A stretch of DNA of 64,000 bases from Macrostomum lignano (Eukaryota), in the NCBI GenBank assembly GCA_002269645.1, contig NIVC01001802.1, positions 1-64,000 of the forward strand. Direction: 5' to 3'. Shown here piece after piece: positions 6,952-62,609 of this stretch (positions within the stretch are counted from its first letter, which is position 1; each line of letters opens with the position of its first letter). A program made the position numbers and the translations under genes. The notes beneath the pieces were generated by a model. It saw only the letters and a list, made by a program, of their open reading frames with translations, searched no databases and was not told the origin of the DNA.

Positions 6952-8259
<1,308 letters not shown>

Positions 8260-16000: not shown

Positions 16001-17696
16001 AGAGATGCTGTACGCAGGAACGCCACTCAAACACGCGTGCACACAGGATGAAATTCTAACTGTCACGCATGTGTCTGTGAAGTGTCGGCACGCATGTGTC
16101 TGTGAAGTGTCGGCACGCATGTGTCTGTGAAGTGTCGGCACGCATGTGTCTGTGAAGTGTCGGCCGGCATGTGTCTGTGAAGTGTCGGCACGCATGTGTC
16201 TGTGAAGTGTCGGCACGCATGTGTCTGTGAAGTGTCGGCCGGCATGTGTCTGTGAAGTGTCGGCACGCATGTGTCTGTGAAGTGTCGGCACGCATGTGTC
16301 TGTGAAGTGTCGGCACGCATGTGTCTGTGAAGTGTCGGCACGCATGTGTCTGTGAAGTGTCGGCACGCATGTGTCTGTGAAGTGTCGGCCGGCATGTGTC
16401 TGTGAAGTGTCGGCACGCATGTGTCTGTGAAGTGTCGGCCGGCATGTGTCTGTGAAGTGTCGGCACGCATGGGTCTGTGAAGTGTCGGCCGGCATGTGTC
16501 TGTGAAGTGTCGGCACGCATGTGTCTGTGAAGTGTCGGCCGGCATGTGTGGAAATCAGAGAAAAGACCCCTCAGCTAATTTCTCAGAACAAGGCCAAATT
16601 AATGCGGCCGCACACAGAATCGAACCAAGGCCCAAGGGTCGTGGCGCGCGAGCCGCTGAGCTGCTCAGAGAAACTGCTCGCTGGCACAGAAACCGAACCC
16701 GGAACATCCGGAACTCGATCGTCATTAATGCAGACATGCTTTACTCAGCAGTGACGTGACACCAAAAAGCTTCCTTTCCCAACACTCACATAGACGGCCA
16801 GCTCAGAGCTGTTCGGAGGCTGCTCGAACCAGCGGCACAGCGGGTAGTCGATGAGCAGAGAGCAGTTGCTGGAGTTGAATACAATCCCGCGACAGTCCGG
16901 CACCTCGCTGCACTTGTCAACGCAGCCAACGAGCGATGAGACAGCCGACTGGTGCTGAAGAAAGGCGGCGATAATCTTCACCGAGTTGCTGGGAATATGG
17001 ACCCGCTTGTGCGTCACGTTCCGGTCCACCAGGTACGCTGTGAAATATGTATTTTGGGGATGGATTTGATGGGCAATAAGGTGAGAAAAGCTAGCGTCAG
17101 CGTTGAAACTGGCTGGATTGCATCAACCTTTCCATGCTTATGCTAGAACCCATCGCTTAAACAGACCACAGGTGTAAGACTAGGTTTTCATCGAAAAACT
17201 CACCAAGTAGGCGTGCGGCGTCGGTGCCTCTGAGCAGCTGCTGCTCAAAGTCGCCAGCCTTCCAGATCTGCACACCGTCCTCAGGCCGAATCTCCCTGGC
17301 AACAAAGCTGCTGCTGCTCAAGCCCGGCTCGCTCGCATTGTAGATGACGAGCACCTGGCATTCGAGGATCGCGGCTTTTTTGACGACTGCGACAGCGCAG
17401 GACGTTGCCCAGCACTTCCACAGGCAGAGAACATCTGATCGAACACCCGTATCGTTGAGCAGCTCGCTGCTCACGTAGCTTCCGATGCCGATGAAGCCGC
17501 TGGTCACCCGATCGTAGAGACCTCCGGTGAGGGCGCTGAGGTCTGCGGCGGAGACCACAGCTGAAAGGGGTGTGAGTGAGCAGTGAGTGAGTAGAGTCTC
17601 TCCGTCAAGGTGGCACCATTTTCATGCAGACTCACCCGTGAGCAGCTGGCACAGAAGCAGCTGCAGCGGCTCGGACCGCTTGGCTGTCAGCTTCAT
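13032..17696 (-). CDS. Secreted SP-PAN/apple-PAN/apple-FReD protein (420 codons; exons 17696-17636, 17560-17204, 17037-16790, 15028-14896, 13492-13032) with an in-frame TAA at 14938-14936
   Basis: All junctions are GT-AG with compatible phases (1,1,0,1). N-terminus MKLTAKRSEPLQLLLCQLLT. Two C-x3-C-x(4-5)-C...C modules (CLWKCWATSC; CVDKCSEVPDC). FReD motifs SFDRLWAE*KTGFG and GLEWLH...FRVDL. Confidence 0.7.
13729..14597. mobile_element. Non-autonomous hAT-like element
   Basis: TIR CAGTGTTGGGCAC / GTGCCCAACACTG; imperfect 8-bp TSD aatatggg/aatattgg; many subterminal cgttaa/ttaacg motifs. Confidence 0.8.
15283..15948. repeat. Foldback element: degenerate ~260-300-bp inverted arms (15283-15540 and 15645-15948)
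   Basis: Matching pairs include caaggacgact/agtcgtccttg, ggaggcagatccagtgttc/gaacactggatctgcctcc and ggcacagctc/gagctgtgcc. Confidence 0.8.
16064..16548. repeat. 25-bp minisatellite, about 19 copies
   Basis: Unit gcatgtgtctgtgaagtgtcggcac. Confidence 0.95.
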
Positions 17697-20079: not shown

Positions 20080-22315
20080 ATGAGTTCCGCAGCCCAAGTG
20101 GCAGTGGCTGCACTGCTTCTAATTTTCTGCTCGCTGGTAGCTGCTCAGCTTCCTCAGAGAGCTTCAACTGCCTCATCCAAGCCGCGCTTTGTGACCCAGC
20201 TCAACGTGAGCGGCTGTCCGCTGGTTGTATACGACTCGGGAGAGCATGCACTGGAGATCGAGCCTATCATGTGCGTCACTGGTGCCATCGAAAAGCAGCC
20301 TTTGAAACTCGATCTGATTTCGCAGATTTTGTACATCCGAGTCCCCATGCTTCTATGGGATGCCGACATGCTTGCCCAAGCTGGGCTGCAGCTGCGAAAC
20401 GTTTCTCTAAAGCCCGTTCGCTTCGCTACTGTCACTAATATAGGAGCTGTGGCAACCAAGTCTAGCGTTATTGGGTTCGAGTGGAGTTCAAATCACTCGG
20501 CTGGTGTTCTGAAAATAGGAATAAATAACACAGAAGCGGCTCTGATGATGATGACGTGAGTGTATTTAGAGTCCTTTTTGGTAGAAAAATATTTTAGGCA
20601 ATTTTTGACAAAACCAATATTAAACTAATCAATTTCTAGACGAGAAACGTCGCCTACCGACGCCTTAGACCAGGTGCAACTCAAGGTCACCATTTTATCA
20701 AATCGCAAATTTCGACAAGTCACTCTGCGCCCAGTGGCGCGAAACCGCGGATTCACGGAACTGTCTCTCTTAAGTGCCAGATACGAATTGGAAACTTGCT
20801 CAGACATTAAATTTGTACTTTTAATGCACCACAGAAACCGTCAAGTTCGAGTATTTCAGCGACTCGATTCTAGGGGTGCCTATTATATTGAGCCTCTACT
20901 CTGGAGCGTCGATAAGTCAACATACGGACCAGTTGAATATGACTACGGCAGAAACATGCACTACCTGAAGCTGGATCTCGTGCTGCAAGATGAGGCCACA
21001 CTCGATGCCGTGAGGACACAGCTGGCCGAATTGTCGCCTCGCTCAGTCGAGTTTATGCGGCTGTGGGCTGTTGAGAGATCGGTGAGCTCTTTGTTGAGCT
21101 CTCGGTTCGAGGTCGGTCCGCTGATGGTGTCGGCAGACTGGAAGTTCGCTCAGCTGCGGCTGTACTGCAGGAGTATAAAACAGTGCACCAATCTGAAGTA
21201 ATTATTGCCTCTATAGTATTATGTCCGGATTTTTTAGTATTTTAAAACAAAAAACCATAAAACTACAACACATTTTAGGTCCAATGTAATGACAAAAGAT
21301 CCATTTGCTTTTTGGTATCATATCAATTGGCATCCAACGTCAATTGTTAATTCGGATTGCCTCTTCAAGTCGGACTCGACCGTCTCCTCTGGGAAGACGG
21401 AAAGCTCCACCGACGCCATCAGTTGCAGCCGCTCCGCAAGCTGCGCCTATCTTCGCAGTCTTGCTCGGAGTGGAGACCTGAGTTTTGGCAAGCTAAAAAG
21501 GCTCGCAGATGGCAGATGGTTTTTCATTATACAGCAGAGAGTCTCGGCCGAGGAAAGTTTTCGGCGCACTCTGGCGTCGTACATCCGCGGATTCGGGAAT
21601 GAAAACAACTTCTGGATCGGTACGATGTCTCAACATTAAAAAGTTTTTCTTTATTGTTTCTGTATGATAAAATCTGAGTTGCTTTTGAGAATCTTTTGTC
21701 AGACTTATCTTGGCTTAGCCGCGGCAAGAGTCCCAGGGGCTACCAGTGTAAAAATGAAACTACACGCGAAATTCAGCGTTCAAATATTGTCAGTGCTTTC
21801 AATTCTTCTAAATACTATTAAACATTTCAAATCGCACCAGCCCATAAAAAGCAAATCAAATATTAACAAACGTGAATTCGCCCTTCATTGACATTGCAGG
21901 TCTGAACAGAATTGCCTCGCTTACCGACGGCGGCGCCACCCTTCGAGTGGAGATGAAGCTGTGGAACGGCACCGAGTGGTACGCGGAGTACTCGAACTTT
22001 ACAGTTGAAGGCGTCGGCTCCATGTATCGGATGACGTACCGTGAGATGCTGAGGGACAAGTCTAACGCCAAACACGATGCAATGCAGTACCACAAAGGCA
22101 TGCAGTTTTCTACCATCAATGTGGACAATGACAGAGACCGTAGGAAGTCCTGCTCCAATGCATATGGCGGAGGTGGCTGGTGGTTCAATAGCTGCTACCA
22201 TTTCAATCCAAATGGGCTGTTCCCGACCAGCCCGACAATAAACCTGAAGTACATGCTGTGGCACTCTGACAGATGGATGTCCATTCGGCTTGTGCGGCTG
22301 ATGGTGCAGTTATGA
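20080..22315 (+). CDS. FReD gene A: signal peptide, two copies of an unassigned domain, linker, fibrinogen C-terminal domain (about 596 aa; exons 20080-20555, 20640-21197, 21279-21619, 21900-22315)
   Basis: Phases 2,2,1 join without stops. FReD motifs IIQQRVS...F.RTLASYIRGFGNENNFWIG|LNRI...LRVEM...FST.NVDND...GGWWFNSCYHFNPNG. Confidence 0.85.
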
Positions 22316-23386: not shown

Positions 23387-25442
23387 ATGAAAATGTCACT
23401 CAAAAATGCAGCACTGTCACTGCTGTACTTCTATATGGGAATCAGCGGCCAGGTCTCCCAGTGCGCTCCCGCTGCCTCTTCTCTACGGCTCCGCTTCGTG
23501 GCGCAGCTCAACGTGAACGGCTGCGCGCTGTTCGTGCACGACACGGGAGCGAGCGACGGTCCGCACTTGGCAGTCGAGCCGCTCATGTGCGTGATGCGAA
23601 GCTTAAAGTCTCTGAGTCCGAAAGTGGACCTAATCACGCAGCAGATGTACGTGAGCATTCCTGTGTTGATGACGGATGATGGGATGCTGGCAGAAGCTCA
23701 GCGTCAGCTGCAACATCTATCACCAAAGTCTGTGACCTTTGCGGCTGTGTCAGAAGTCAATGCTTCCACAGATGCTAACTCCACTGTTCGTTCTATTGCT
23801 TTTATCTGGAGTCCACATGAGTCCGTTGGAGATCTAAGAATCGAAACAGATATGGACAGAAGTGCATATGAGCTCTCGTAAGTTTTGAAAAATTGGGTTG
23901 GCTCATATTTACAAATCATTATAGTGAAGATTCGAACAAACCTGAACCATCCTGCTCAGATCAGAACTGCAGCTATCATCGGTCGAATCCCTTCAGCGAA
24001 TTCGCTTATCGGCGAAGCTTTTTCTCAACGGAACCTACCAGACCTACCAGTACCGAGTATCGACTCAAAATCACAGCTTCTTTGACCCCAGTGAGTACAG
24101 ATTAAGGTACAGTCCCCTGCCTTCATGTCGACAACTGAGATTCATTCGTTCCATCAGTCTGGAGAACTGCTCTGTTCGAGTGCACCAGAGACTCGACATC
24201 AAGGGCCACTTCCTTATCGAGCCTCTGCTGTGCCACAACATCTCCAGCTTGAGCAGCGAGTCAATCAGATATGACTTCAGCCGCGGCAAATATTATCTCA
24301 AGCTGAACCTTTTAGTGCAGGATGAAGCATCACTTCAGACTGTGAGAACTAAACTGGCTGATTTTTCGCCTCTCTCAGTGGAGTTCATGCGGCTGTGGAC
24401 TGCTGAGAGATCGGTGAGCTCTTCGTTGAGTGCCCGGTTCGAGGTCGGTCCGCTAATGGTGTCGGCAAACTGGAGGTCCGCTCAGCTGCGGCTGTACTGC
24501 TCGTCCTTAAACCAGTGTGGCGCTGCCAGGTTGGCGCTGCAGTTAAATGCAATTTTTTAGTCCATATTGAATGACAGGAAAATTGCCTCTTGTTTTAGAT
24601 TTTCTGCTCTGTCGGAGCCTGTTGACTTGTGGCGACATCTAAAATGGCGGACATCCTCTCTGGTGGCGAATCAGTGCTTATTGATGTCCCATAAGCATCT
24701 TTCGTCTTGGAGAATGAAAACGATTGGCAGTTCGCCTTCCTGCTCAACCTACAACTCCTGCCGCAATATTCCCAGCCTATTGCGATCCAAAATTGTTTCC
24801 TTCGAGACGTTTCGCAGTTTACCTGACGGCAGATGGTTCGTGACCATCCAGCAGAGGGTGAGTGGAAGCGTCAGCTTCCAGCGAACGTGGGCGGAATACG
24901 AGACTGGCTTTGGCCACGACACCGACTTTTGGATTGGTTCGTTTTTTGTTATTTTAGTAAATGTATCCATCCTGAAATTGTATAAGGCCTAAGCTGTAGT
25001 TCCAGTAGCTTTTGTTGCAATTTCAGGTCTATCTGCGATTAGTCTGCTAAGCACAGGTGGCGTCACCCTCAGAGTGGAAATGAGGCTGTGGAACGGCTCT
25101 GAGTTGCATGCGGAGTACGCGGGATTCCAGGTGGGCGACGCCAGCTCCAGGTACCGGATGACGTACCGAGAGATGCTGCCGGAGAGGTGCACCGTCAGCT
25201 GGGACGCCATGGAGCACAACAATCGGTCCCGGTTTTCCACCATGGACACAGACAACGACAGGCGCAGTGAGTCGTGCTCCGACGGCTACGGCAAAGGTGG
25301 CTGGTGGTTCAACAACTGCATGCACTTCAACCCAAACGGGATTTTTTCCACCCGTGAGACTTCGGACGATGCGTACATGTCTTGGTTTTCGCGTCGCCGG
25401 TGGCTGGCACTTCGCCAAGTACGACTGCTGCTCCAGATTTGA
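23387..25442 (+). CDS. FReD gene B, paralogue of A (about 604 aa; exons 23387-23877, 23960-24529, 24599-24936, 25027-25442)
   Basis: Same exon phases as A. The acceptor at 23959 gives a frame that aligns residue-for-residue with gene C (LSAKLFLNG...[11 protein letters not shown]). FReD: [25 protein letters not shown]...[15 protein letters not shown]. Confidence 0.85.
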
Positions 25443-26149
25443 CAGGAAAAGAAACAAATGAATTCTCACAAATGCTCAGCAATAATGTCTAAATATCTCT
25501 TAATCTGAAGGCATCTAATCTAATCTGCATTGTTAATATATAAAATTTTTCTATGATTAACTGAGTAATCGTCATCTCTTTTTTGCCTGATTCAAAATAG
25601 CAAATTTAATTGGTCATTGTACTTTAAGAAGTCTTTTAAAAGTCTTTTTTTGATAAATAGAAATTGATTAAATAAAATTGAATAATGTCTATACTCGAGT
25701 TGCACTACTGCTGCGTCCTGTGCTAACAATTGAGTGAGGCTTTTTCAATTACCGATCTGAAAAGCGTCAAACTCGTCCAAATGCTTAGAAGACTCAGTCT
25801 GATAAAGTCTGCTTGAGCACAGAGAGACAATTAAGAGCCATGTCTGTTGCATCACATAGATTTTGTGAATCGCGTCTTTAAGTATAAAGATCTGTAGCCT
25901 TTTGAGTCTATTGGATTTAGAAAGTCCGATAATTGAATAAAGATAATTCTGAGTTATTTTGTCAACAAAGTTCTCATATCAAATTAGTTAGCCATATAGT
26001 AAATAGATTTTACAATATTTAGCCTTGTTTTTATCCTCTGACAATGAATTGTAGTTTGATATACGTCACTGTCAGTACATGCAGGTAGCAGTTAGGTTCG
26101 AAGCTGTTGTTGAATTGCGAAGCTAAGGGGAACCTCAAAGTCTCTGCTA

Positions 26150-26280
26150 GTACTTTAGGCACTTTAAGCACTGTAAGCACTGTAAGCACTGTAAGCACTG
26201 GAAGCACTGTAAGCACTGGAAGCACTGTAAGCACTGGAAGCACTGTAAGCACTGTAAACACTGTAAGCACTGTAAACAGC
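26150..26280. repeat. 9-bp tandem repeat (agcactgta/agcactgga)
   Basis: Visible tandem units. Confidence 0.9.
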
Positions 26281-26684
26281 ACTCCTTCACCTTTTATCAA
26301 CTATAGCTCGACCCGGCCTCCAGGGTTTAGTCTCGAGACTTCCGAAGCTCACTTGATAGTATAAAAATAACCCCTGAACTTGATCGCGCTGAAATTCTGC
26401 ATTAGCATCCTGTATCTGAATAGGCAATTAGAAGCTCTTGCAGATTAAAAATAGATATGTTTTTAAAGCGTCTCTTCCTAATTATAGAGCATTTATTTAT
26501 TCAAAACTTTCTATAGTGTTCCCGTTTGTCTCGCATTTCTAAATTGCAGACTATTATAAATAAAAGAATGCTAACAGCAAAGATGAAGTGCAATTCAACC
26601 TATTTTAAAACGCGTTTGTAAAATTCTACACATCTTTAAACACAAAGCAGATTGTAGAGTCTTCAATTCTCACAAACAAAGATA

Positions 26685-29600
26685 ATGGAGCAACTAAATT
26701 TGCTTTTCAAAACTTTGCTGGCTCTGCTGCTCTGCTCGCTGGCAGCCGGCCAGGTCTCCCAGTGCGCTCCCGCTGACTCTCCGCGGCTCCGCTTCGTGGC
26801 GCAGCTCAGCGTGAACGGCTGCGCGCTGTTCGTGCACGACACGGGAGCGAGCGACGGTCCGCACTTGGCAGTCGAGCCGCTCATGTGCGTGACGGACAGC
26901 CTGAGAGGCATTGTTCCCCGATTCGACTTCATCACCCAGCAGATGTACTTCAGCGTTCCTGTATTGATGCGGGACGCTGGGATGCTCGCAGAGGCTCAGC
27001 GTCAACTGCGGCATCTTTCACCGAGGTCTGTGAGCTTCGCCACGGTGACCAACATCAGCGTCTCAGCCGACACCCGCTCATCGGTTCGGGCTTTGGGCGT
27101 CCTGTGGACTCCGGATGAGCCAGTCGCCACTCTCAGATTGAAAAACATCAGCTCGGAGGACAATTCAAGTCGAGTTCCAAAGACATGGTTAATTAAAAAC
27201 ATTCTTCCAATGCAATGCGTGTACAGTCAGAAGAACAGTGATGGCCTTAGAAATTCACCCCGAGAAGCTCTTGAAAAAGTGAAGCTAACAGCTTCAATCA
27301 TTGCAAACGGCTCCTGCCACGATGTTCAGAGTCGCCTCCGGCTGCAGAATGACATCCTCCTCGACTCAGAGATAAACGCACAAAGATTCTCACCCCTGAT
27401 GACATGCCGACAGCTGAAATTCAGCCGCACCGTCAATCTCGAGAACTGCTCTGCCCGAGTGCACCAGAGACTCGACATGAAGGGCCACTTCCTCATCGAG
27501 CCTCTGCTGTGCCACAACATCTCCAGCTTGAGCAGCGAGTCAGTCAGGTATGACTACAGCCGAGACATGCACTACCTGAAGCTGGATCTGGTACTGCAAG
27601 ATGAGGCCACACGCGATGATGTGAGGACTCAGTTGGCCGACTTGTCGCCTCTCTCGGTCGATTTCATGCGGCTGTGGACTGCTGAGAGATCGGTGAGCTC
27701 TTCGTTGAGTGCTCGGTTCGAGGTCGGTCCGCTGATGGTGTCGGCAGACTGGAAATCAGCTCAGCTGCGGCTGCTCTGCACTACATCATTGCAGTGCCGA
27801 GAACTCAGGTTTGATGATATTATGACATTGAAATGAAGAAATTTGAAATTTGAAATTTCGGTTTCGGTTTTTGCGAATGCGTTATTAGTATATAATTTCT
27901 GAGCGCTCTTTAGCAGCAGTTTACTATTCTGCCTGCTCGCATGACATAAAAATACTGTCGTCATTTTGCACAAAATGTGTGATTATTTTATTCGATGACG
28001 CAGTGAACGCTCCTAAAGTTTGCAAGTTTATCAAGCATCCAAAATTCAAATTGGTCCTTTCAGCTTCTGAATTAGTTATGCTATCGAAAAACATCAAGTG
28101 AGTCCTTCAGTTTAGGGAGTCGTATTCTTCTGTAATACGTTTTTTATGAGCTAGGAGTGTAGTCACCCAACAGTTTCCATCACAAGATCAATAGCAAGAA
28201 GTTGGAAGCATATGCAATAAGTCCTGTACAACCAAAACAGTATTGGAGGTGCTGCTGCTAACGCTGCAGGCAACTATCCAACACCACTGAGACAGGTGGG
28301 AATTCACTGTTTCATCAACTTCTAGCAGCTGGCTGATTCTGTCCCACAGTTTCTTATGCTTTGGATTATATTCACACAAAGGATCGCCCTCTTACGCAAG
28401 GCATTTATGACATTGCAAGACTTTTGCCATTTTAGCTCTTTGATTTTCCATAATGCTCATATGTCTTTTGACCATTTCTTACGTCGATTCAAAGTTTTAT
28501 TAGCAAAATATTGTTCAACTTCAGGTCTGTGCTTCTTTTGGAACCTGTTGATATCTGGCGACACGTGCAGTGGCGCGTGACATCGCTGGTTGCTGAGCAG
28601 TGCCTCTTCGAGTCCAGCCGAATCACTTCATCATGGAGAATGAAACCACTTGGGAGTGCAGCCAGCTGCTCCAGCCTCAGTTCCCGGGCCGAGCTGTGCA
28701 CAGCCGACTTTGCTAAGCGAGTTAAGCGAGACGGTCGTTGTTTCACAATAATTCAGCAGCGACTCACCGATAAAGTGAGTTTTCAGCGAAACTGGACTGA
28801 GTACGAGACTGGCTTCGGTGACGATATTGACTTCTGGATCGGTGAGTGGTGTCGGGCCAGTTGTTTAGCGTGAGTCGAAAAACTTTAAGCAAAGCCTTGC
28901 GAAAAATTTTAGAAGTTCTTATTATGTCAGTAGGTCGCGTGTTAGACGAGACCGATGGTCAGTTATAGGAGACCGAAGAGATTTCTGAATTTGTGACCGT
29001 CCGCAGTATTCAATTTTCATTTGGTCCTTTGGTGGACGAATTGATAGATAGATGAGTAAGTGAATGAATGGATGAATGAGTTGATCAGTAGCGCAAACAG
29101 AAATTTTTTGAGGGTGGGATTCTGGAGGGTAAAGTCCCCGGGGGGGGGGCGGAGGGGTGGCTCTGTTTTTTGCGAAAATTCGCTTGGTCCCCCCTTCGAT
29201 TTTTTTGGGTCTCCGCCTAAAGGGCCCCCCTGGTTGCGCCCCTGGAGTTGATGAATTGATTGGTGGATAGGTGGGTCCAGGGTCCAGGGTGGACGCATGG
29301 TATAGATATGTGAGTATACTGTTGAAAGAGTCACGAGAGAGAACTAGGGGAGGGTGCTCAACGGATCAAGTAGCTAGTCAATCTCTTCACTGCTAAGTGA
29401 ATCGCTTAGAAAGTGGGGAACTCCCAGCACACAGCTACATGTATTGTCTTGTATTTCGAGTATGTCGGATGCTTAGGGGGGCCGTAGCCCAGCGGTAGCG
29501 CAGCTGCTCTGGTGTGCCAGCGACCCAGGCTCGATTCCAAGTGCAGTCACATTAATTTGGGGCTGAATTGGAATCTCGGCTTGGCTCTGCTCGTGCAATT

Positions 29601-30336
29601 AACGGCCTTGAGAGCCAACCCCCCAAGGCGCAGTGAAGTGTACATGCCTAACGATAATATAAAGTTAGGGCCGCTGTACACTCCTGTGTGAGTGTGTGCC
29701 TGCGTACGTATCCGCGCGCTTGTGTGCCTGCTCAGGGGAGTCGGCGGAATGGGCAGTAATGCCTCTCGCCGGTTGTGTGCCTATGTCGCCTAAAGTGCGC
29801 CAGGGTGCACACAACCCCCCTGCCTCTAATAAAAAAAAATGTCGGATGCTTTTCGGGCCGCCACATCACCAACTAATACAACTGCAGGCCTGCAGAAGAT
29901 CCACAGTCTGAGTGGCGCAACGCCGCGCCTGTTTCGAATGGAAGCTCGCAACCATCAGAACGGCAAGCTGTACGTGTGCGAGTACTCTCACTTCTCGGTT
30001 GGCAGCGCCAGCACGCGGTACAGGCTGAGTGTCAGCGGTTACCTGCCCGGCAGCTCCAACACCTCTAAGGACGCATTCTCCTACAACAACAATCTGACCT
30101 TCTCAACAATGGACTCGGGGTCGAATTCTCGCTGCTCAAGACAGAATAGTAACGCTGGATGGTGGTACGACAGCTGCACCTACGTCAATCCAAACGGCTA
30201 CTTTAACTTGTCGGAGATCGGCAGCAGATGGAACAGTTCGAGAAATATGCAGTGGCTTTACGCAGCTGACTATGTGGGGGGATTCACGATCAGACCAATG
30301 CTGAGAAGTATTCGTCTAATGTTGGAAATTAGCTGA
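26685..30336 (+). CDS. FReD gene C (about 612-629 aa; exons 26685-27808 with a possible in-frame intron from 27188, 28525-28841, 29888-30336)
   Basis: SP MEQLNLLFKTLLALLLCSLAAG; same two N-terminal domains; FTIIQQRLTDKVSFQRNWTEYETGFGDDIDFWIG|LQKIHSL...FSTMD...AGWWYDSCTYVNPNG. Confidence 0.85.
29086..29244. mobile_element. hAT-like MITE in gene C last intron
   Basis: Perfect 8-bp TSD GAGTTGAT; TIRs CAGTAGCGCAAACAG versus CAGGGGCGCAACCAG. Confidence 0.85.
29476..29838 (+). mobile_element. tRNA-headed SINE, family 1
   Basis: Head ggggggccgtagcccagcggtagcgc...ggctcgattcc, AATAAA plus poly(A), 13-bp TSD ATGTCGGATGCTT. Confidence 0.9.
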
Positions 30337-33488: not shown

Positions 33489-34367
33489 TTATACTTGTCT
33501 CGAAGGATTTGATTAGAACCAGTATTGAAAGCAGTAATAAGGTAGCCTAGGGGCACAAAAATATATGTTATAAAATCGTAAAGTTTTACTCCAGAGAGTC
33601 AGTCATTCTATTTTGAAAAAATACTGTAAAAGAAAAACAAGAGGGGTCGATATTGGCCATAGACAGTCTCCAGGATAGGGCTGCGTAAAATCAATCGATT
33701 GATGGAAAAAGAAGCTGCCAAGTTAGTCTGTGCTAATAGTTTATGTAATTAGCCGTTTGCTGACACAGTGCTCATTGTTTAGCAATTTGACGATCATTAT
33801 TCACATTTTTAATGCAGAACAATCCACTACTACAAACAATGCATTGTCTGTAGGATCGTCAAACAGAAAAACAATGCAAAGAATCAGCGGTCGCAGCACG
33901 TGACAACGATTTGTCTATGATATTAAGGGGGGAAAAGATGAATATCTTTATCCAGTTCCCTAAAATAGCCAGGCTTTAAGTTGAAAGTGTCTTTGGTTGT
34001 TTCTGCAATTACACATCTACTGTCTATGGCTTCAAGTTGAAAGTGACTGTTGGCTAAATTTAGAATGGCTATTTTAGGAAACTGGATAAAGATTTCCATT
34101 CCAAAGTTGGCAGAAAAAATCTTACAGGTGTCAGGATTCACCTGCTGCGAGCCTGTAAAGATTCACTGTATTGCCTTGGCACAGTTTCACTACAAAGTTT
34201 GTCCATTTTTTGGATCACCCGTTATAATAGTCCAGATGCCAAAGAGGGATACTTGGATACTAGCTACTTTAATTTGAATTCAGCATTTTTTATTAGATAA
34301 TGGTAATCGCTAAAATGAAAGTTCACTATCGCTTTATCGTCGTTTAATTATAAGCTGCGTCTTCCGA

Positions 34368-37300
34368 TCAATGCTGTGGGAAGATCTCACGGATTAGGGG
34401 CAGCACCTGGGGCCGCTCCTTGGTTACCTGAAGGCACGCGTCAATACCCTGTCTCTGACGCTCAGTCAGCGGGTCACTGTGGTACACCGTCACCCACGGG
34501 CTGCCTGCAGTAAGGAAATTGTTCATTGAGTTTGGTCATAAAGGGAAGTGCAAGACGTGCAGAATTACCATCTTGATTGTTAAAGTAAATTTATTTATTT
34601 ACGATTTTCGATTTACGATTTAGAAATTTAACGATTCTAAAGGTACATTTATTGTTGTGAAAGTACATTCTAGAATGTAAAAGTACATTATCGATTGTGA
34701 AAGTACATTATCGATTGTGAAAGTACATTCTCGATTGTGAAAAAAGTACAGTCTCGATTGTGAAAGTATATTCTCGATTGCGAAAGTACATTCTCGATTG
34801 TGAAAGTACATTCTCGATTGTGAAAGTACATTCTCGATTGTGAAAGTACATTCTCGATTGTGAAAAAAGTACAGTCTCGATTGTGAAAGTATATTCTCGA
34901 TTGCGAAAGTACATTCTCGATTGTGAAAGTACATTCTCGATTGTGAAAGTACATTCTCGATTTCAAAATTTACTCGCACTTCCCGAAGTATTTTTTTTAA
35001 AAATTAGAAAAATTCTTCGTAAATTGATTCAGCGGCTTTAATGAAATTGATTTTTACCTACACTGACTCGGTCTAAAATTTGGAAGCTTCCTACTACAGT
35101 TTAGCTCAGACAAAAACGTACCCTGTTTAACAGCGTCACCCTTGACAACCAGCAGCTCGAGTCCGGTTGAATGATCCAGCTTGCCACCGAGACGCTCCGG
35201 CCTGCTGAGCTGATGGCAGATCTTGGCCAGAGACAGGGCGTCAATGTCCGACACGAAACCTGCAATCAAAGGGCATTCGTAGCATGTAGCATTTATCCTA
35301 GCATGTGGTTATGAGGCAGAGTGCCTCAGCGGTAAACGCGTCTTACTCCTGAATCACGACGACTCACAGTCATGGCCTCCCATGCCGCTGTTCACCCTGT
35401 GTGAGCGTGTGCCGTCATAAGGCATGAATGCTTTTGCCTCTTCGAGTTCTGAATGTTGTTTCATTTGTGGTATCAAGTTATTTTGCCTTTAAAGTCCACC
35501 TTGTGAACACCAATAACTCTTGTAGTAGGCTTCATTCGAAAGCAATCCTACGAACTATATGTAGGGCCTCCTGGGGTGAACTTAGTAAACAATGTCTTTG
35601 GTGATTAAAATTCATTTGAAGGAGCCTTGAGCGTGCATGAGCATGAAGTGACTCGTTTTAGCATCAAGAGTGTAGCCAGGATCTATCACTGGGGAGGGGA
35701 AAGGCGCCATTATAAATTTGAGGTGGCGCTACACCTTTTGGCGACATCGTCCCGCAACGATTTTTTTTTATTAGAGGCAGGGGGGTTGTGTGCACCCTGG
35801 CGCACTTTAGGCGACATTGTCACACAACCGGCGAGAGGCATTACTGCCCATTCCGCCGACTCCCCTGAGCAGGCATGCAAGCGCGCGGATACGTTACGCA
35901 GACACACACTCACACAGGAGTGTACAGCGGCCCTAACTTTATCAATTGTTAGGCATGTACACTTCACTGCGCCTTGGGGGGTGGCTCTCAAGGCCGTTAA
36001 TTGCACAAGCGAGCCAAGCCGAAATCCCAATTCAGCCCCAAATTAATGTGGCTGCACTTGGAATCGAGCCTGGGTCGCGGCACACCAGAGCAGCTGCGCT
36101 ACCGCTGGGCTACGGCCCCCCTCCCGCAACGATTAGGTCATGACAATTCTGTCCATTCCGCCACCCCATGAGCACATAATGTACAAAGGCACGCGTTCAT
36201 ACACACGCTCACTAAGGGTGTACATCGGCTCTGACTTTCTAATCATCAGGCATGTTTTGTAGACTCTCTGCGCCTTGGGGCCGGCCTTCGTGACTGTGAA
36301 ACCGCACAACAACCTCCAGGCCAATGATGGTCCAAAAGTCCTTAAGTTGTACTTTTACTATATATTTTACGGTTATCCTGATCACCAACCTGTTGATGAA
36401 CTACTCAAGGCGCAGCTGGATCACTCTTGACAAATTGCTAAACTTAGTGACTTAGCGGATTTGAGCTCCCCTGAGTACAATGCACTCACCGGAAGCGGGA
36501 CTGCTCAGCTGAGTAACAGACAGCGGCTCCCGGCCCATCCGGCTCAGGTACTCCTGCACGCTGAACTGGCCCGGCTCGCACAGATTGTCGGCCAGCGCCT
36601 CGGAGACGCCCTGGTTCACCAGGATGCGCCGCATCGCCTTCAGCGCCGAGCCGTCGCTCCAAGAGTTGCGCACCGCCGCAGCGCCGGCCTCGTCCGTTGC
36701 GACTTTGCCGGTCAGGCGCAGCAGGCAGCCGCTTTGGCGCGCCACCAGCTCGCGCAGGCCGGCCGAGGCCGCGTCGCCTCCATTCAGCACCTGCAGAGCT
36801 TCGGCCACCTCGACGGCGTTGCCGATGCAGCGGGCGAGCGGCCGCTCCATCTCGGTGATGAACACTATCACTTTCATGCCGTAGCCGCGTCCGGTTCGCT
36901 CCTTGGGCGGTTGGATGAGAGAGTTATTTCAGTGTAAAACAGTTCATGCTCACAAGTGAACTGCCAAAGGGTAGGAAGTCTGTCCACTGACAATTTTTTT
37001 GCGCCGTCACGGATGTCGAACGATCGTATTGTTAAAAAGATTTGAGGTTAACTTTTTGGCAAGCATATTAGTTGCCATCAGTCGTTCAGGCTGCAAATGG
37101 ACGAGAACTTCAACAGACTCAAAATCGTTGCTCAAAGGCACACCTTTTGGGAGGAATCGTTGACGACCTTGTGCAGCCTTACTAATGAGAGACAAAATCC
37201 GCAGTGCAATTATTGTACGTGTTCCACCCAAACTACATGTAACGATTGACGCAAATATGATCTCACAATGGACTCGGCCAGGATCTGAGCCTCCTCAAAA

Positions 37301-38262
37301 GTGGTCATGAAGGCGGCGCGGCCGAACTTCACGTCCATCACCAGGGCGGAGATGCCCTCGGCGGCCTTCTTGCTCAGGATTGAGCTGGTGATGAGCGGCA
37401 CGGACCGGATGGTGGCGGTCTCCGACCTGGCCGCGTACAGCACGCGGTCGGCGGGCACCATCGCCTCGGTCTGGCCGGCGATGAAGCCACCAACGTCCGA
37501 CATGACGGCGCCGCGCATCTGCTCGGCTGTCAGGCTGGCGTTGAAGCCGGGAATCGACTCCATCTTGTCGATGGTGCCACCAGTATGGCCGAGCGACCGG
37601 CCGGAGATCATCGGCAGCTTGAGGCCGAGGGCGGTCAGTGATGCCACCATCGGTGGGCTGACCATGTCGCCGACGCCTCCGGTGCTGTGCTTGTCCACCA
37701 CCTGCCGGGGGCATTCAAATTGGCAGGTAGCGTGTTAGCGGAGTAAAAATAATGTAACTCTATAGTCATAATTCATGTCCATTCAAAATCACCGGAACGG
37801 AACCCCTAAGTTTAAAAGAAATATTTTAATTTTATATCAATTTTACAATCGTCCTATCGTTTTGTTTTACAAGCGTATTTCGCATTTGGTGAACAAGAAT
37901 GAATATGAGGAGTACATGTAGCTACCATAAATAACAGAAAGCGCAATTGAGCTTTTGGACTGCAGTGATTTTCATACACTCGAGTAGTTCAGGGTCAGAA
38001 CATCAGACAGAAAACGCACCAATGGTCTCAGGCTGTCAGGCCAGGACAGAGTCTCCCCCGAAGCAGTCATGGCCGAGGTGAGTTGAACAATCTCCTCCGC
38101 GTCCATGCCTTTGGTGAAGATGAGCATGAGCACTGCTCCGATTTGCTGTCCGGAGAGCCGGCCTGAGCTCACCAGCCGCACAAGCAGCTTCACGTCCTCT
38201 TCACTCCATCGCTCTCCGCTCAGCTTCTTCTCAAGCAGTTCGCTGAAATCCAACAATAGCAT
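34368..38262 (-). CDS. TYMP: Thymidine phosphorylase (about 454 aa; exons 38262-38020, 37701-37267, 36901-36490, 35259-35122, 34504-34368)
   Basis: [72 protein letters not shown]. Phases 0,0,1,1 are consistent. Confidence 0.9.
34672..34962. repeat. 20-22-bp intronic minisatellite (cgattgtgaaagtacattct)
   Basis: Tandem units within TYMP intron 4. Confidence 0.9.
35763..36121 (-). mobile_element. tRNA-headed SINE, family 1 (second copy)
   Basis: Reverse complement of 29476-29838; 13-bp TSD TCCCGCAACGATT at 35750-35762 and 36122-36134. Confidence 0.9.
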
Positions 38263-40654: not shown

Positions 40655-41512
40655 CACCGTTGCCATAGACAGCACTCTCCACATTCTCCCACTGCCATAG
40701 ACAGCACTCTCCATATTCTCCCACTGCCATAGACAGCACTCTCCACATTCTCCCACTGCCATAGACAGCACTCTCCACATTCTCCCACTGCCATAGACAG
40801 CACTCTCTACATTCTCCCACTGCCATAGACAGCACTCTCCATATTCTCCCACTGCCATAGACAGCACTCTCCACATTCTCCCACTGCCATAGACAGCACT
40901 CCATATTCTCCCACTGCCATAGACAGCACTCTCCATATTCTCCCACTGCCATAGACAGCACTCTCTACATTCTCCCACTGCCATAGACAGCACTCTCCAC
41001 ATTCTCCCACTGCCATAGACAGCACTCTCCACATTCTCCCACTGCCATAGACAGCACTCTCCATAATTCTCCCACTGCCATAGACAGCACTCTCCACATT
41101 CTCCCGTTGCCATAGACAGCACTCTCTACATTCTCCCACTGCCATAGACAGCACTCTCCATATTCTCCCGCTGCCATAGACAGCACTCTCCACATTCTCC
41201 CGTTGCCATAGACAGCACTCTCTACATTCTCCCACTGCCATAGACAGCACTTTCCATAATTCTCCCACTGCCATAGACAGCACTCTCCACATTCTCCCAC
41301 TGCCATAGACAGCACTCTCCATATTCTCCCACTGCCATAGACAGCACTCTCCATATTCTCCCGCTGCCATAGACAGCACTCTCCACATTCTCCCACTGCC
41401 ATAGACAGCACTCTCCATAATTCTCCCACTGCCATAGACAGCACTTTCCATATTCTCCCACTGCCATAGACAGCACTCTCCATAATTCTCCCACTGCCAT
41501 AGACAGCACTCT
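40655..41512. repeat. 32-33-bp minisatellite (ctgccatagacagcactctccacattctccca)
   Basis: About 26 tandem units. Confidence 0.95.
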
Positions 41513-41981: not shown

Positions 41982-42660
41982 TGACAAGTAAATGACACCT
42001 GACAAGTACATAATGACACCTGACAAGTACATAATGACACCTGACAGGTACATAATGACACCTGACAAGTACATAATGACACCTGACAAGTACATAATGA
42101 CACCTGACAAGTACATAATGACACCTGACAAGTACATAATGACACCTGACAAGTACACAATGACACCTGACAAGTACATAATGACACCTGACAAGTACAT
42201 AATGACACCTGACAAGTACATAATGACACCTGACAAGTACATAATGACACCTGACAAGTACATAATGACACCTGACAAGTACATAATGACACCTGACAAG
42301 TACATAATGACACCTGACAAGTACATAATGACACCTGACAAGTACATAATGACACCTGACAAGTACATAATGACACCTGACAAGTACATAATGACACCTG
42401 ACAAGTACATAATGACACCTGACAGGTACATAATGACACCTGAAAAGTACATAATGACACCTGACAGGACGACAGGTACATAATGACACCTGACAGGACG
42501 ACAGGTACATAATGACACCTGACAAGTACATAATGACACCTGACAAGTATAAAATTACACTCGACAAGTACATAATGACACCTGACAAGTATAAAATTAC
42601 ACTCGACAAGTACATAATGACACTTGACAAGTACATCATGACACCTGACAAGTACATTAT
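41982..42660. repeat. 21-bp minisatellite (aagtacataatgacacctgac)
   Basis: About 30 tandem units. Confidence 0.95.
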
Positions 42661-42807
42661 GAAACACTTATTGACAGACTCATTACTATTAATAGGAACC
42701 TGTCAAACCACACAGTCAAACACCAAGCTATTACAATGAAGCAAAACAAAAATGCTAACTATCATATATCATATCTTTACAACAGTTGCCACAGGCTGCC
42801 AGTCAAC

Positions 42808-45800
42808 TCAGACAGAGACAGCCCGCTTCGCCAGTCCCACTGACTCCAGCAGAGGCACCCCGCTGGGTACGGTCAGGTCAGCGGCGGCTTCCCCGACTGA
42901 GTCGGCAGCAGCAGCGGCGCCGGCTGCTCCAACGAGACCCAGCGAATCGGCCATCAGCTGCTGCCGCTTCTGGCTGCACTGGCGCTGCTGGCGAGAGCGG
43001 CGATGGCGCAGCAGGCGGGTGGGGCGGTGGCGAACACGGCGAATGAGGCGCACGGTTGACCCCGGCTGCTGCCAGCGAGAGGCGGCGGAGCCACCGCTGC
43101 GACTGCTGCTGACTCCGACAGAGAGGCGACAGCCAGAGGCTGCGTGCCTGTGGATGGGTTGGGTGCGTTGGGAGGCTGGTGATGATGAGCGATGGCTAAG
43201 GTAACTGGGGTTGAACATTGGGGTGTGCAATAGGCAGTTGCTGTGGCATTCAGTCATTCTGCCTATCAGACTATTTATTGCCACTGTGAGGGTATTTATT
43301 GTGTCTACAGGGGTACTTATTATGTCTATATGGGTATTATTTATTGTCTATATAGGTATTATTTATTATGTCTATATGGGTATTATTTATTGTGTCTATA
43401 TGGGTATTTATTGTGTCTACATGGGTATTTATATTATGTCTATATGGGTATTTATTGTGTCTATGAGGGTATTTATAGTGTCTATAGGGGTATTTATTGT
43501 GTCTATAAGGGTATTTATTGTATCTATATAGGGTATTGATTGTGTCTATTGGGGTATCTATTGTGTCTATAGGGGTATTTATTGTGTCTATAGGGGTATC
43601 TATTGTGTCTATAGGGGTATCTATTGTGTCTATAAGGGTATGTATTGTGTCTATTGGGGTATTTTTGTGGCTATAGGAAGTTACTGTGTCTATAGGGGTA
43701 TTTATTGTGTCTATAAGGGTATTTATTGTATCTATATAGGGTATTGATTGTGTCTATTGGGGTATCTATTGTGTCTATAAGGGTATGTATTGTGTCTATA
43801 GGGGTATTTATTGTATCTATTGGGGTATTTTTGTGGCTATAGGAAGTTACTGTGTCTATAGGGGTATTTATTGTGTCTATAGTTGCATTTCTAGTGTCCA
43901 TAGGGGTATTTAGTCAATCATAGGGGTATCCAGGCTGCCTATGGGTACCCAGACCCAGCAGATGTCCTCACATTGCCATGGCATCGCCATTCACAGTGGC
44001 GAAGCCGCAGAGGCAGTAGAGCGCAAACGCCGGATTGCTCAGGCCCGAGCCGACGCCGATATCGCCCAGAGCAGCAGGAGCCGCCGAGGTGGCAGCAGCA
44101 GTCGATGCCGCAGTGCGGTGGCGGCGCTCGTGCCTGGCGAAGGCCTCAACGCAGCAGGTAACATAGCGGCATGCAGGGCACAGGTGCTGGCGCTGGTAGT
44201 GGCCTGAGAATTATAATTCAAATACTGTTAATTAGCCAGCTTTTCTGTTGAGCAATAATGCTACTGCAAGTAGACAAAATGCATAAAAGTTAGTTGCCCA
44301 TGGCTTTTTAGCAAATTTAACTACTTCAAGTAGGTTAAAAGCTTGTAGCTTTACGAAAAAAATAATAGATTACACCTGCCCGAATTGGGCCACATGTGCA
44401 ACGGACAGCTCAGCCGCAGCTATTGCAAGGTACGGCTGTTCATTCCAAGGACTGGGGGTCGCCACACACACCTTCAATCACCTCAGCTAATGCTGGCACC
44501 AATTTTACAGCTGGGTGAACTGAAGCAATGTAGAGTTAAGTGTCTTGGTCAAGGACACAAATTGTTCTAGTGGGATCGGGAATCGAACCCCCGACCTTTC
44601 AGTCGTGAGTCTGACGCTCCAACCACTGGACAAATCTGCCTTAAAAACTATTTTAAGAATTTTATCATCTAGACTAATACTACTTATGACATGAGTAGGC
44701 AGCAAAGCTCGGCTTCGATAGCTCACCAGGCAGGCTCATAGGCTGCAGGCATTCCAGGCAGGTCTCCTGCCGCTTCACTTTGAATTTCAGCTGGGCCAGG
44801 CCGCATAGCCTGGAGGCTGGTGCAGCGTTCAGACTGCGGGTGCCCGCGGCTGCAGTCACCGCTGCAGAGGCTGCCGCTGCAGTCGCGCCAGACGGTACTG
44901 GGGACACCTCTGCCACGGTGAAGCATTTGCCAATGTGCGCCGAGTCCAGGTGCTGCTTCAGGCTTTGCCGGCTAAGAAAGTGCAGCTTGCACTTTGGACA
45001 GCCGTTTGAATTGGCGTTGCCATGGGGATCTGAGCAACTGTCCGCCAGGTGGGCTCGCAGATGAGAGTAGTAGGGGCTGAGAGACTGCGCGGCTGGGGAG
45101 CTGCCAGTGCCTGCGGAGGGATTAAAAGATTAGGATAAATATCCTATCTGAACACTATTGTGGGATAAATATCCCAACTGAATACTACTGTGGGATAAAT
45201 ATCCCAACTGAATACTACTGTGGGATAAATATCCCAACTGAATACTACTGTGGGATAAATATCTTATCTGAATACTACTGTGAGATAAATATCCCAACTG
45301 AATACTACTGTGGGATAAATATCCCAATTGAATACTACTGTGGGATAAATATCCCAACTGAATACTACTGTGGGATAAATATCCCAACTGAATACTACTG
45401 TGGGATAAATATCCCAACTGAATACTACTGTGGGATAAATATCCCAACTGAATACTACTGTGGGATAAATATCCCAACTGAATACTACTGTGGGATAAAT
45501 ATCTTATCTGAATACTACTGTGAGATAAATATCCCAACTGAATACTACTGTGGGATAAATATCCCAATTGAATACTACTGTGTGATAAATATCCCAACTG
45601 AATACTACTGTGGGATAAATATCCCAACTGAATACTACTGTGGGATAAATATCCTAACTGAATACTACTGTGGGATAAATATCCTAACTGAATACTACTA
45701 TGAGATAAATATCCCAACTGAATACTATCATGAGATAAATATCCCCTGTACAGTAAAGTTCATAGGGAAATCATCACAGACAGAAGCTAAAAATGGAAGT

Positions 45801-62596: not shown

Positions 62597-62609
62597 GTGA
62601 GTGTCTGGC

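What the first reader, a model, noticed from the sequence alone, without database searches (positions are those of the whole stretch)
23446..27675. Gene C is a patchwork of B-like and A-like tracts (gene-conversion mosaic)
Seen: B 23446-23594 and C 26747-26892 share about 115 nt with one mismatch, then drop to roughly 70% identity. C 27441-27562 is nearly identical to B 24161-24282. At about 27563, C switches abruptly to match A 20954-21065 (acatgcactacctgaagctggatct...gatgaggccacac), where B is clearly divergent. All three share gagagatcggtgagctct...ggttcgaggtcggtccgct. Inference: ongoing segmental conversion or unequal crossover is shuffling the paralogues, a germline (possibly somatic) diversification route reminiscent of FREP diversification.
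Basis: partly seen in the sequence, partly recalled or inferred. Interest (0 to 1): 0.7.

Follow-up and report, generated by a model that had tools for sequence, protein, structure and literature searches.

The report
Gene-conversion tracts among flatworm lectin paralogues
Three neighbouring fibrinogen-domain lectin-like genes of the flatworm Macrostomum lignano share short, GC-rich stretches of near-identical DNA inside otherwise very old, diverged sequence, which is the ordinary footprint of gene conversion in a multigene family and not evidence that one gene is being actively shuffled.

Summary
The window is bases 1-64000 of M. lignano contig NIVC01001802.1. It carries three tandem 4-exon genes (A, B, C). 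Each encodes a signal peptide, two copies of a Macrostomum-restricted N-domain and a fibrinogen C-terminal domain.

B and C share two tracts (T1 and T2, about 97% and 94% identical). A and C share a third (T3, 89%). All three share a fourth (T4). The flanks are 50-67% identical and the introns cannot be aligned.

For the same gene pair, synonymous divergence (dS) is 0.03-0.4 inside the tracts and saturated (above 1.3) outside. Permutation tests give p<1e-4. Third-position GC (GC3) is 0.68-0.88 in the genes that share a tract and 0.37-0.64 in the one that does not. The same switch points occur in three homeologous copies of the cluster, so this is not an assembly artefact.

C carries the sequence typical of a larger "C-like" pool (at least 5 loci) at every tract. 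B (T1, T2) and A (T3) are the genes that share pieces with that pool. The exchange homogenises the conserved domain core rather than diversifying it. Most of it predates the subgenome split. Nothing bears on somatic change. This is a known kind of process in an undescribed family.

The parts
20080..22315 (+). Gene A (596 aa). Exons 20080-20555, 20640-21197, 21279-21619, 21900-22315. Signal peptide, two N-domains, Fibrinogen_C.
   Evidence: ORF and splice model; identical to NCBI protein P0057; Pfam PF00147 E=2e-32.
23387..25442 (+). Gene B (604 aa). Exons 23387-23877, 23960-24529, 24599-24936, 25027-25442.
   Evidence: identical to NCBI protein P0055; Pfam PF00147 E=2e-35.
26685..30336 (+). 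Gene C (about 629 aa). Exons 26685-27808 (the frame is open through the position of A/B intron 1), 28525-28841, 29888-30336.
   Evidence: The homeolog C3 is annotated with the same read-through structure (P0060, 627 aa). Pfam PF00147 E=1e-30.
26747..26892 (+). Tract T1 in C, shared with B 23446-23594 and with all C-like paralogues. It is not shared with A (67%).
   Evidence: B versus C-likes 97-98% identical. B-C dS is 0.03 against 1.3-1.7 in the flanks. p<1e-4. GC3 is 0.84-0.88 against 0.64 in A.
23446..23594 (+). Tract T1 in B.
   Evidence: Same evidence as T1 in C. The B homeologs B2 and B3 carry the same tract.
27430..27547 (+). Tract T2 in C, shared with B 24151-24268 and the C-like pool. 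A is 49% identical here.
   Evidence: B versus C-likes 90-93%. dS 0.17-0.18. p<1e-4. GC3 is 0.77-0.85 against 0.37 in A. Four-gamete failures among B, C, D, E and F.
24151..24268 (+). Tract T2 in B.
27548..27638 (+). Tract T3 in C, shared with A 20937-21027 and the C-like pool. B is 64-67% identical here.
   Evidence: A versus C-likes 87-89%. A-C dS is 0.39-0.41 against saturation elsewhere. p<1e-4 (third positions 0.0006). GC3 is 0.68-0.75 against 0.46 in B.
20937..21027 (+). Tract T3 in A.
27639..27760 (+). Tract T4 in C, shared by all three genes (A 21028-21149, B 24360-24481) and by the pool.
   Evidence: All pairs are 87-95% identical with dS 0.11-0.23. Fisher tests against the flanks give p from 1e-5 to 7e-10. 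GC3 is 0.71-0.73 in all genes.
26734..26746 (+). Possible very short A/pool tract in the signal-peptide core (A 20129-20141), immediately 5' of T1.
   Evidence: 12 of 13 nt identical between A and the pool, against 46-62% for B. Permutation p<1e-4, but the tract is short and weaker evidence.
27141..27429 (+). Hypervariable inter-domain linker plus block V1b. It is not exchanged with A or B.
   Evidence: B-C about 51% identical. C-likes are 63-76% identical to each other, with dS 0.74-1.4 and dN/dS 0.2-0.5. The linker part cannot be aligned.
29888..30336 (+). Exon 4 of C, a divergent half of the fibrinogen domain unlike any other family member.
   Evidence: 31% aa identity to A exon 4. The only close database hit is its own homeolog. 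Present in C2 and C3 as well.

Best explanation
A, B and C are old tandem paralogues of a Macrostomum-specific family of secreted proteins. Each has two N-domains and a fibrinogen-type lectin head. Outside the tracts their synonymous sites are saturated and their introns cannot be aligned.

Superimposed on this old divergence are short (about 90-150 bp) tracts inside exons. These were homogenised by GC-biased interlocus gene conversion within a pool of exchanging genes. The pool consists of the multi-copy 'C-like' subfamily: C, D about 42 kb downstream, E and F on other contigs, G2 beside D2 in the homeologous cluster, and others. B takes part at T1 and T2. A takes part at T3, and perhaps at 13 nt of the signal peptide. 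All three take part at T4.

C is therefore not a special patchwork. It carries the pool consensus at every tract, and B and A carry pool-type pieces.

Relative ages, inferred from divergence: T3 and T4 are oldest (about 9-13%), T2 is intermediate (about 7-10%), and T1 is youngest (about 2%, equal to the divergence between subgenomes).

The sharp B-like to A-like switch at about 27548-27565 is most simply a homology discontinuity. Once the pool and A shared T3 and B did not, later exchanges between B and the pool could not extend past that point. This step is inferred.

The direction of transfer is not resolved. I lean towards pool to B for T1 and T2, because there are many more potential donors in the pool.

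The net effect is concerted evolution of the folded core of N-domain 2 and the first third of N-domain 1, not diversification.

Shown: the tracts, the dS and GC3 contrasts, the reticulation, and the presence of the same mosaic in three homeologous clusters. Inferred: the mechanism, the order of events and the direction.
For: Identity profile and exact mismatch counts.

Permutation test on polymorphic sites and on third positions only.

dS for the same gene pair: B-C is 0.03 (T1) and 0.17 (T2) against 1.3-1.7 in the flanks; A-C is 0.4 (T3) against saturation; Fisher p ranges from 6e-13 to 8e-4.

Introns and flanks cannot be aligned between A, B and C, or between C and D, E, F.

C-like genes at other loci carry the same tract sequences (T1 97-100%, T2 89-98%) while differing by 24-37% in block V1b.

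GC and GC3 are raised only in the genes that share a given tract.

All four tracts contain site pairs that fail the four-gamete test.

Homeolog divergence inside the tracts (0.7-1.2%) equals that in the variable blocks (0.95-1.3%), so the tracts are neither mutational cold spots nor under unusual constraint.

The same mosaic is present in three homeologous contigs. Their roughly 2% divergence matches the published subgenome divergence (PMC10733133).
Against: No outgroup species is available, so donor and recipient cannot be polarised.

With only three gene types, part of the 'switching nearest neighbour' pattern could in principle reflect lineage-specific rate changes. The dS drop for the same pair argues against this.

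The coincidence of the end of B's tract with the start of A's tract is explained only by inference.

T4 is also the most conserved protein segment within the A, B and C types, so protein-level selection contributes to its identity.

The permutation test and the dS calculation are my own implementations, not GENECONV, RDP or PAML.
Confidence: 0.85

Rival explanations
1. Gene C itself is a recent recipient, assembled from B-like and A-like donor tracts by ongoing conversion or unequal crossover, and this serves germline or somatic diversification as in snail FREPs.
For: Within the window alone, C switches from B-like to A-like at about 27563. A few differences between homeologs look like later micro-events: B3 26782-83 TA to CG (the pool state), C2 26879 shared with D and D2, and C3 27754-58 carrying the pool state.
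Against: D, E, F and G2, and about 12 annotated proteins, have the same sequence as C at every tract and the same T2|T3 junction. Locus-specific tract variants are shared by all homeologs, so the states were fixed before the subgenome split. The tracts are the conserved parts, not the variable ones. The tracts are bounded on both sides and the introns are unalignable, so this is not unequal crossover. Clustered differences between homeologs also occur outside the tracts.
Confidence: 0.07
2. Chimeric origin of the C-type. An ancestral pool gene was built once from a B-like 5' part (through T2) and an A-like T3-T4 part. It then amplified, so the junction is inherited rather than created by later tract limits.
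For: One event would explain why B's similarity ends where A's begins. B-pool divergence in T2 and T4 and A-pool divergence in T3 plus T4 are of similar size.
Against: B-pool flanks (V1a, V1b) are saturated, so T1 and T2 are islands and not the remains of a whole B-like 5' half. A-B similarity in T4 needs further exchange. Pool members differ by 24-37% in V1b yet by 0-10% in the tracts, so repeated conversion is required in any case.
Confidence: 0.25
3. Purifying selection alone, on the protein or on an overlapping RNA or DNA element, keeps the tracts identical.
For: T2-T4 cover the folded core of N-domain 2 in the structure model. T4 is the most conserved protein block.
Against: Synonymous sites are also identical, with dS 0.03-0.2 against more than 1.3. 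The gene that does not share a given tract is fully diverged there although it encodes the same domain. Homeologs accumulate differences in the tracts at the normal rate. There is no Rfam hit, no excess RNA structure (z from -1.2 to +1.3) and no co-extensive antisense ORF. More distant subfamilies do not conserve most of T4.
Confidence: 0.03
4. The duplicates are young, and the variable blocks were hypermutated or replaced.
For: T1 is about 0-3% diverged between loci, similar to the divergence between subgenomes.
Against: Introns and intergenic DNA cannot be aligned between the paralogues. Each tract has a different non-participating gene. Variable blocks show dN/dS of 0.2-0.5, not a hypermutation signature.
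Confidence: 0.03
5. An assembly or polishing artefact, that is, collapsed or chimeric paralogues.
For: M. lignano is a neopolyploid and hard to assemble (PMC10733133).
Against: The same tracts and switch points occur in three homeologous contigs that differ by about 2% and by indels, and in other loci. Polishing cannot turn 65% identity into 100% over 110-150 bp.
Confidence: 0.01

Closest known systems
Interlocus (ectopic) gene conversion and concerted evolution in multigene families, including GC-biased conversion (classic cases: primate globins, Hsp70, histones, MHC; from my own knowledge)
   Same: Short tracts bounded on both sides. dS drops inside the tracts. The flanks are not homogenised. 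The pattern is reticulate. GC3 is raised in the genes that share a tract.
   Different: The partners include both tandem and dispersed loci in a neopolyploid genome. Different paralogues join the pool at different tracts. No outgroup is available to show polarity.
Biomphalaria glabrata FREPs and the VIgL family (FREP/CREP/GREP), PMC12074976
   Same: Secreted proteins with tandem N-terminal domains and a C-terminal fibrinogen head. The same N-terminal module is also combined with a C-type lectin head (P0024, P0025). Both are multigene families with gene conversion.
   Different: The N-terminal module is not IgSF. It has no Pfam match and no PDB fold match and is restricted to Macrostomum. Conversion here homogenises the conserved blocks. 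There is no evidence of somatic diversification or of an immune role.
Hybrid genes made by unequal crossing-over (Lepore-type globin, opsin hybrids; from my own knowledge)
   Same: Tandem paralogues with switch points inside the gene.
   Different: Those cases have a single junction, with everything distal (introns included) coming from the partner gene, and a change in copy number. Here there are several short islands and the introns cannot be aligned.

Membership tests
Interlocus gene conversion / concerted evolution | Discrete tracts, bounded on both sides, that are far more similar than their flanks | tested here: met
Interlocus gene conversion / concerted evolution | Synonymous divergence for the same gene pair is much lower in the tracts than in the flanks | tested here: met
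   B-C dS is 0.03 and 0.17 against more than 1.3. A-C is 0.4 against saturation. Fisher p from 6e-13 to 8e-4.
Interlocus gene conversion / concerted evolution | Introns and flanks are not co-homogenised, which excludes recent whole-gene duplication | tested here: met
   BLAST similarity is confined to exons.
Interlocus gene conversion / concerted evolution | Reticulate history (incompatible sites, polymorphisms shared between paralogues) | tested here: met
   Four-gamete failures in T1-T4; shared variants.
Interlocus gene conversion / concerted evolution | GC enrichment of the converted tracts (gBGC) | tested here: met
   GC3 is 0.68-0.88 in the genes that share a tract and 0.37-0.64 in the paralogue that does not.
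Interlocus gene conversion / concerted evolution | Donor and recipient polarity, or segregating tracts, observed directly | not testable with these tools
   No other Macrostomum genome or population data could be reached.
Gastropod FREP / VIgL | C-terminal fibrinogen-related domain | tested here: met
   PF00147, E from 1e-30 to 2e-35.
Gastropod FREP / VIgL | One or two N-terminal IgSF domains | tested here: not met
   No Ig family hit in Pfam. The N-domain model (pLDDT 85) is an alpha/beta fold with no PDB match, best E=0.13 and TM no higher than 0.24.
Gastropod FREP / VIgL | Somatic diversification of the recognition domain | not testable with these tools
   This needs single-animal amplicon or long-read data.
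Unequal-crossover hybrid gene | A single junction, with distal sequence (introns included) derived from the partner gene | tested here: not met
   At least four islands bounded on both sides; unalignable introns.
Diversifying conversion systems (for example pseudogene-templated Ig V conversion) | The converted segments are the variable ones | tested here: not met
   The tracts coincide with the most conserved blocks, and the variable blocks are not shared with A or B.

The most novel reading that the evidence does not exclude
The family could be a flatworm analogue of the snail VIgL receptors. It has a lineage-restricted N-domain with no PDB fold match, used as tandem repeats in front of either a fibrinogen or a C-type lectin head. 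In this reading the homogenised blocks act as homology anchors, letting the hypervariable inter-domain segment and neighbouring cassettes be exchanged among many loci, which would build a combinatorial repertoire in the germline or even somatically.

The hints are these. The nearest neighbour also switches among the C-like genes themselves: C is closest to E in V1a but closest to D in V1b. Annotated proteins combine the same upstream cassette with two different downstream cassettes, for example P0001 against P0014.
Probability: 0.08. Interest if true: 0.7.

Novelty: new member of a known kind. Interest (0 to 1): 0.3.

Why it matters
The finding itself is a clean but ordinary case of GC-biased interlocus gene conversion. 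It shows that judging a mosaic from three neighbouring genes alone can pick the wrong recipient.

Two things give it modest wider value. First, M. lignano carries three subgenomes about 2% apart. That allows conversion to be dated against a known split, and this family could serve as a test case. Second, the proteins are an undescribed, Macrostomum-restricted family. Their architecture (tandem N-domains plus a fibrinogen or C-type lectin head) parallels the snail FREP/CREP receptors. No paper mentioning these genes was found in the library, and M. lignano is amenable to RNAi and transgenesis.

Tried and rejected
- AlphaFold2 on full-length B with a 13-sequence alignment gave pLDDT 33. The model was unusable and was not searched.
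- The Rfam scan of the whole window found nothing.
- RNA folding of each tract showed no excess structure over shuffled sequences.
- Antisense ORFs are short and do not coincide with the tracts.
- The tRNA scan found none, including in the SINE head.
- Literature searches for Macrostomum fibrinogen genes and for the six gene identifiers found nothing relevant.
- DNA for proteins known only from UniRef (P0002, P0004) is not on record, so cassette shuffling among those models could not be checked at the DNA level.
- The clustering of differences between homeologs was considered as evidence for post-split micro-conversion. It was set aside because similar clusters occur outside the tracts.
- The A-B 'fragments' that my permutation test flags in exon 4 were not counted as conversion. 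They reflect C's aberrant exon 4 inflating the set of polymorphic sites.
- Protein outgroups (P0022, P0023) could not polarise T3.


Full report
**What the region is.** The window is eukaryotic DNA with introns. Protein searches return only Macrostomum lignano fibrinogen-domain proteins. Locus L002 overlaps window 62378-64000 at 100% identity, and NCBI proteins P0057 and P0055 are identical to my models of genes A and B. The window is therefore bases 1-64000 of contig NIVC01001802.1 of assembly GCA_002269645.1.

Three tandem plus-strand genes of four exons each encode proteins of about 600 aa:
- A: 20080-22315
- B: 23387-25442
- C: 26685-30336

Each has a signal peptide, two copies of an N-terminal domain with no Pfam match, and a Fibrinogen_C domain with E from 1e-30 to 2e-35. 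In C the frame stays open through the position of A/B intron 1. The homeolog C3 is annotated as reading through that position (P0060).

**Checking the observation.** A codon alignment with a sliding window shows very uneven identity. Exact counts are as follows.
- T1: B 23446-23474 = C 26747-26775, with no mismatch in 29 nt. After a roughly 10-nt patch with a 3-nt indel, B 23486-23594 = C 26784-26892, with 1 mismatch in 109 nt. The next 100 nt are 68% identical.
- T2: C 27441-27562 against B 24162-24283, 7 mismatches in 122.
- T3 and beyond: C 27565-27676 against A 20954-21065, 12 mismatches in 112, compared with 32 in 112 against B.
- T4: the two motifs shared by all three genes each occur exactly once per gene.

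A GENECONV-style permutation of polymorphic sites gives p<1e-4 for both B-C tracts and for the A-C tract. The result holds for third codon positions alone, with p<1e-4 for both B-C tracts and 0.0006 for the A-C tract.

dS is far from uniform.

| Pair and region | dS |
|---|---|
| B-C, T1 | 0.03 |
| B-C, T2 | 0.17 |
| B-C, flanks | 1.3-1.7 |
| A-C, T3 | 0.39-0.41 |
| A-C, elsewhere | saturated |
| all pairs, T4 | 0.11-0.23 |

Fisher tests of synonymous differences, tract against flank, give p from 6e-13 to 8e-4. Introns and intergenic DNA of A, B and C share no detectable similarity, so these are old duplicates and not young ones with hypermutated patches.

No Rfam family, excess RNA structure or co-extensive antisense ORF explains conservation at the nucleotide level.

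Base composition gives independent support. In each tract the genes that share it have GC3 of 0.68-0.88, while the paralogue that does not share it has 0.37-0.64. Variable blocks lie near 0.5. This is the expected footprint of GC-biased gene conversion.

**The family context changes the reading.** The protein search revealed a multi-copy "C-like" subfamily. I fetched DNA for D, E and F, for their homeologs, and for one further copy, G2. D lies on the same contig about 42 kb downstream of C. E and F lie on other contigs.

All of them carry the same sequence as C in T1-T4 and the same T2|T3 junction. Identity is as follows.

| Region | B vs C-likes | A vs C-likes | C-likes among themselves |
|---|---|---|---|
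| T1 | 97-98% | 67% | 97-100% |
| V1a | 62-67% | about 50% | 82-94% |
| V1b | about 51% | about 45% | 63-76% |
| T2 | 90-93% | 49% | 89-98% |
| T3 | 64-67% | 87-89% | 94.5-98% |
| T4 | 87-91% | 88-90% | 90-95% |

Among the C-likes themselves dS runs from 0-0.04 in T1 and T2 to 0.74-1.4 in V1b. Similarity between C and D, E or F is confined to exons.

C is therefore the family-typical sequence. B joins the pool at T1 and T2, A joins at T3 and perhaps at 13 nt of the signal-peptide core, and all three join at T4. Variants shared across paralogues, and site pairs in all four tracts that fail the four-gamete test, point to repeated events rather than a single one.

**Artefact and timing.** The A-B-C cluster exists in three homeologous copies: the window, L001 and L005. 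They are colinear at about 97.8% identity. This matches the 1.9-2.4% SNP divergence reported between the three M. lignano subgenomes (PMC10733133). All three copies show the same tracts and switch points, which excludes assembly chimerism.

Divergence between homeologs is 0.7-1.2% inside the tracts and 0.95-1.3% in the variable blocks. The tracts are therefore neither mutational cold spots nor unusually constrained.

Locus-specific variants inside the tracts are shared by all homeologs, so most exchange predates the subgenome split. Divergence between loci is as follows.
- T1: 0.7-2.7%, no greater than between homeologs.
- T2: 2.3-10.5%.
- T3: 2-5% within the pool, 11-13% to A.
- T4: 4.5-13%.

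T1 is therefore the youngest tract, and T3 and T4 are the oldest.

Only a few differences look like post-split micro-events: B3 26782-83, C2 26879 and C3 27754-58. Similar clusters of differences occur outside the tracts, so "ongoing" remains unproven.

**Mechanism and the switch point.** The tracts are short, lie inside exons and are bounded on both sides. Two of the partners (E, F) are on other contigs. This fits non-reciprocal gene conversion and not unequal crossover.

B's similarity ends where A's begins, at 27548-27565. I read this as a homology discontinuity. Once the pool and A shared T3 and B did not, later heteroduplexes between B and the pool could not extend past that point. A single chimeric origin of the C-type cannot be excluded, but repeated conversion is needed in either case. 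The direction of transfer is unresolved without an outgroup.

**What is being homogenised.** A structure model of one N-domain repeat is confident (pLDDT 85, pTM 0.73). It is an alpha/beta fold with no PDB match: best E is 0.13 and TM is at most 0.24.

T2-T4 cover almost the whole folded core of N-domain 2, and T1 covers the first third of N-domain 1. The variable stretch is the inter-domain linker and its surroundings. Variable blocks have dN/dS of 0.2-0.5, so there is no sign of diversifying selection. The exchange conserves rather than diversifies.

**Comparison with known systems.** The process meets every testable criterion for interlocus gene conversion with GC bias.

The FREP analogy holds only for overall architecture. 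The fibrinogen head is present and the IgSF domains are not.

The N-domain is found only in Macrostomum sequences and in a few unnamed Logan/JGI contigs. It also occurs as 4-6 repeats in front of a C-type lectin domain. This parallels the snail FREP/CREP pairing described in PMC12074976. No paper in the library mentions these genes.

**Verdict.** The recipient is wrongly assigned, and the functional reading (diversification, possibly somatic) is unsupported. This is a new example of a known process in an undescribed gene family.

Noticed in passing
window 29475-29840 and 35760-36122: Two copies of a SINE-like element about 365 bp long, in opposite orientation and 95% identical. It has a tRNA-like GC-rich head and an A-rich tail. 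The first copy is flanked by a direct repeat, tgtcggatgctt, and lies in C's last intron. The second copy is absent from the homeologous contig L001, so it is a subgenome-specific insertion. A further copy lies in L003 at 6741-7101.
   Followed up: partly
L001 13377-16176 (homeolog of C); window equivalents 27082-27084 and 28516-29362: The C copy in the second subgenome is a pseudogene. It has an in-frame stop (TCG to TAG) and an 847-bp deletion that removes exon 3. The window copy and the third subgenome copy (P0060) are intact.
   Followed up: yes
window 29888-30336: C's last exon encodes a half fibrinogen domain unlike that of any other family member (31% aa identity to A). Its only close database hit is its own homeolog. 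D, E and F have B-like last exons. At the exon level C may be a fusion with a different fibrinogen-domain gene.
   Followed up: partly
window 27141-27251, compared with A 20556-20639 and B 23878-23959: Intron 1 of A and B (82-84 nt, phase 2) has no counterpart in C-like genes, where the frame reads through a hypervariable, unalignable linker. This could be intron loss or exonisation. No RNA evidence is available.
   Followed up: partly
proteins P0024, P0025 (other loci): The same N-domain occurs as 4-6 tandem repeats in front of a C-type lectin domain. The module is shared between fibrinogen-headed and C-type-lectin-headed proteins, as IgSF is in snail FREPs and CREPs.
   Followed up: partly
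window 27354-27806 (N-domain 2 of C): The AlphaFold2 model of a single N-domain is confident (pLDDT 85) but has no Foldseek match in the PDB (best E=0.13). Sequence relatives come only from Macrostomum and a few unnamed Logan/JGI contigs. The fold may be new.
   Followed up: partly
window 2804-3345, 16064-16549, 40661-41512, 41991-42662, 43290-43912, 45133-45745, 58794-59478, 60253-61558, 62609-63998; also 26159-26275: The window is unusually rich in minisatellite arrays with periods of 9-82 bp and up to 131 copies. These include a CT-rich 32-mer array that explains the strong skew at 60-62 kb, and a 9-mer array just upstream of gene C.
   Followed up: no
window about 34200-37600 (minus strand) and the far 3' end of the window, up to 64000: By colinearity with the annotated homeologous loci, a thymidine-phosphorylase-like gene (Glycos_transf_3) lies downstream of C on the minus strand and carries the second SINE. 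Part of an ISWI/SNF2-type helicase gene runs over the window's 3' end (it is annotated at L002 1-4843; how far it reaches into the window was not mapped).
   Followed up: no
L006 8164-9027: A further C-like gene, G2, starts about 5 kb downstream of D2 in the homeologous cluster. The array therefore extends beyond A-B-C...D.
   Followed up: partly
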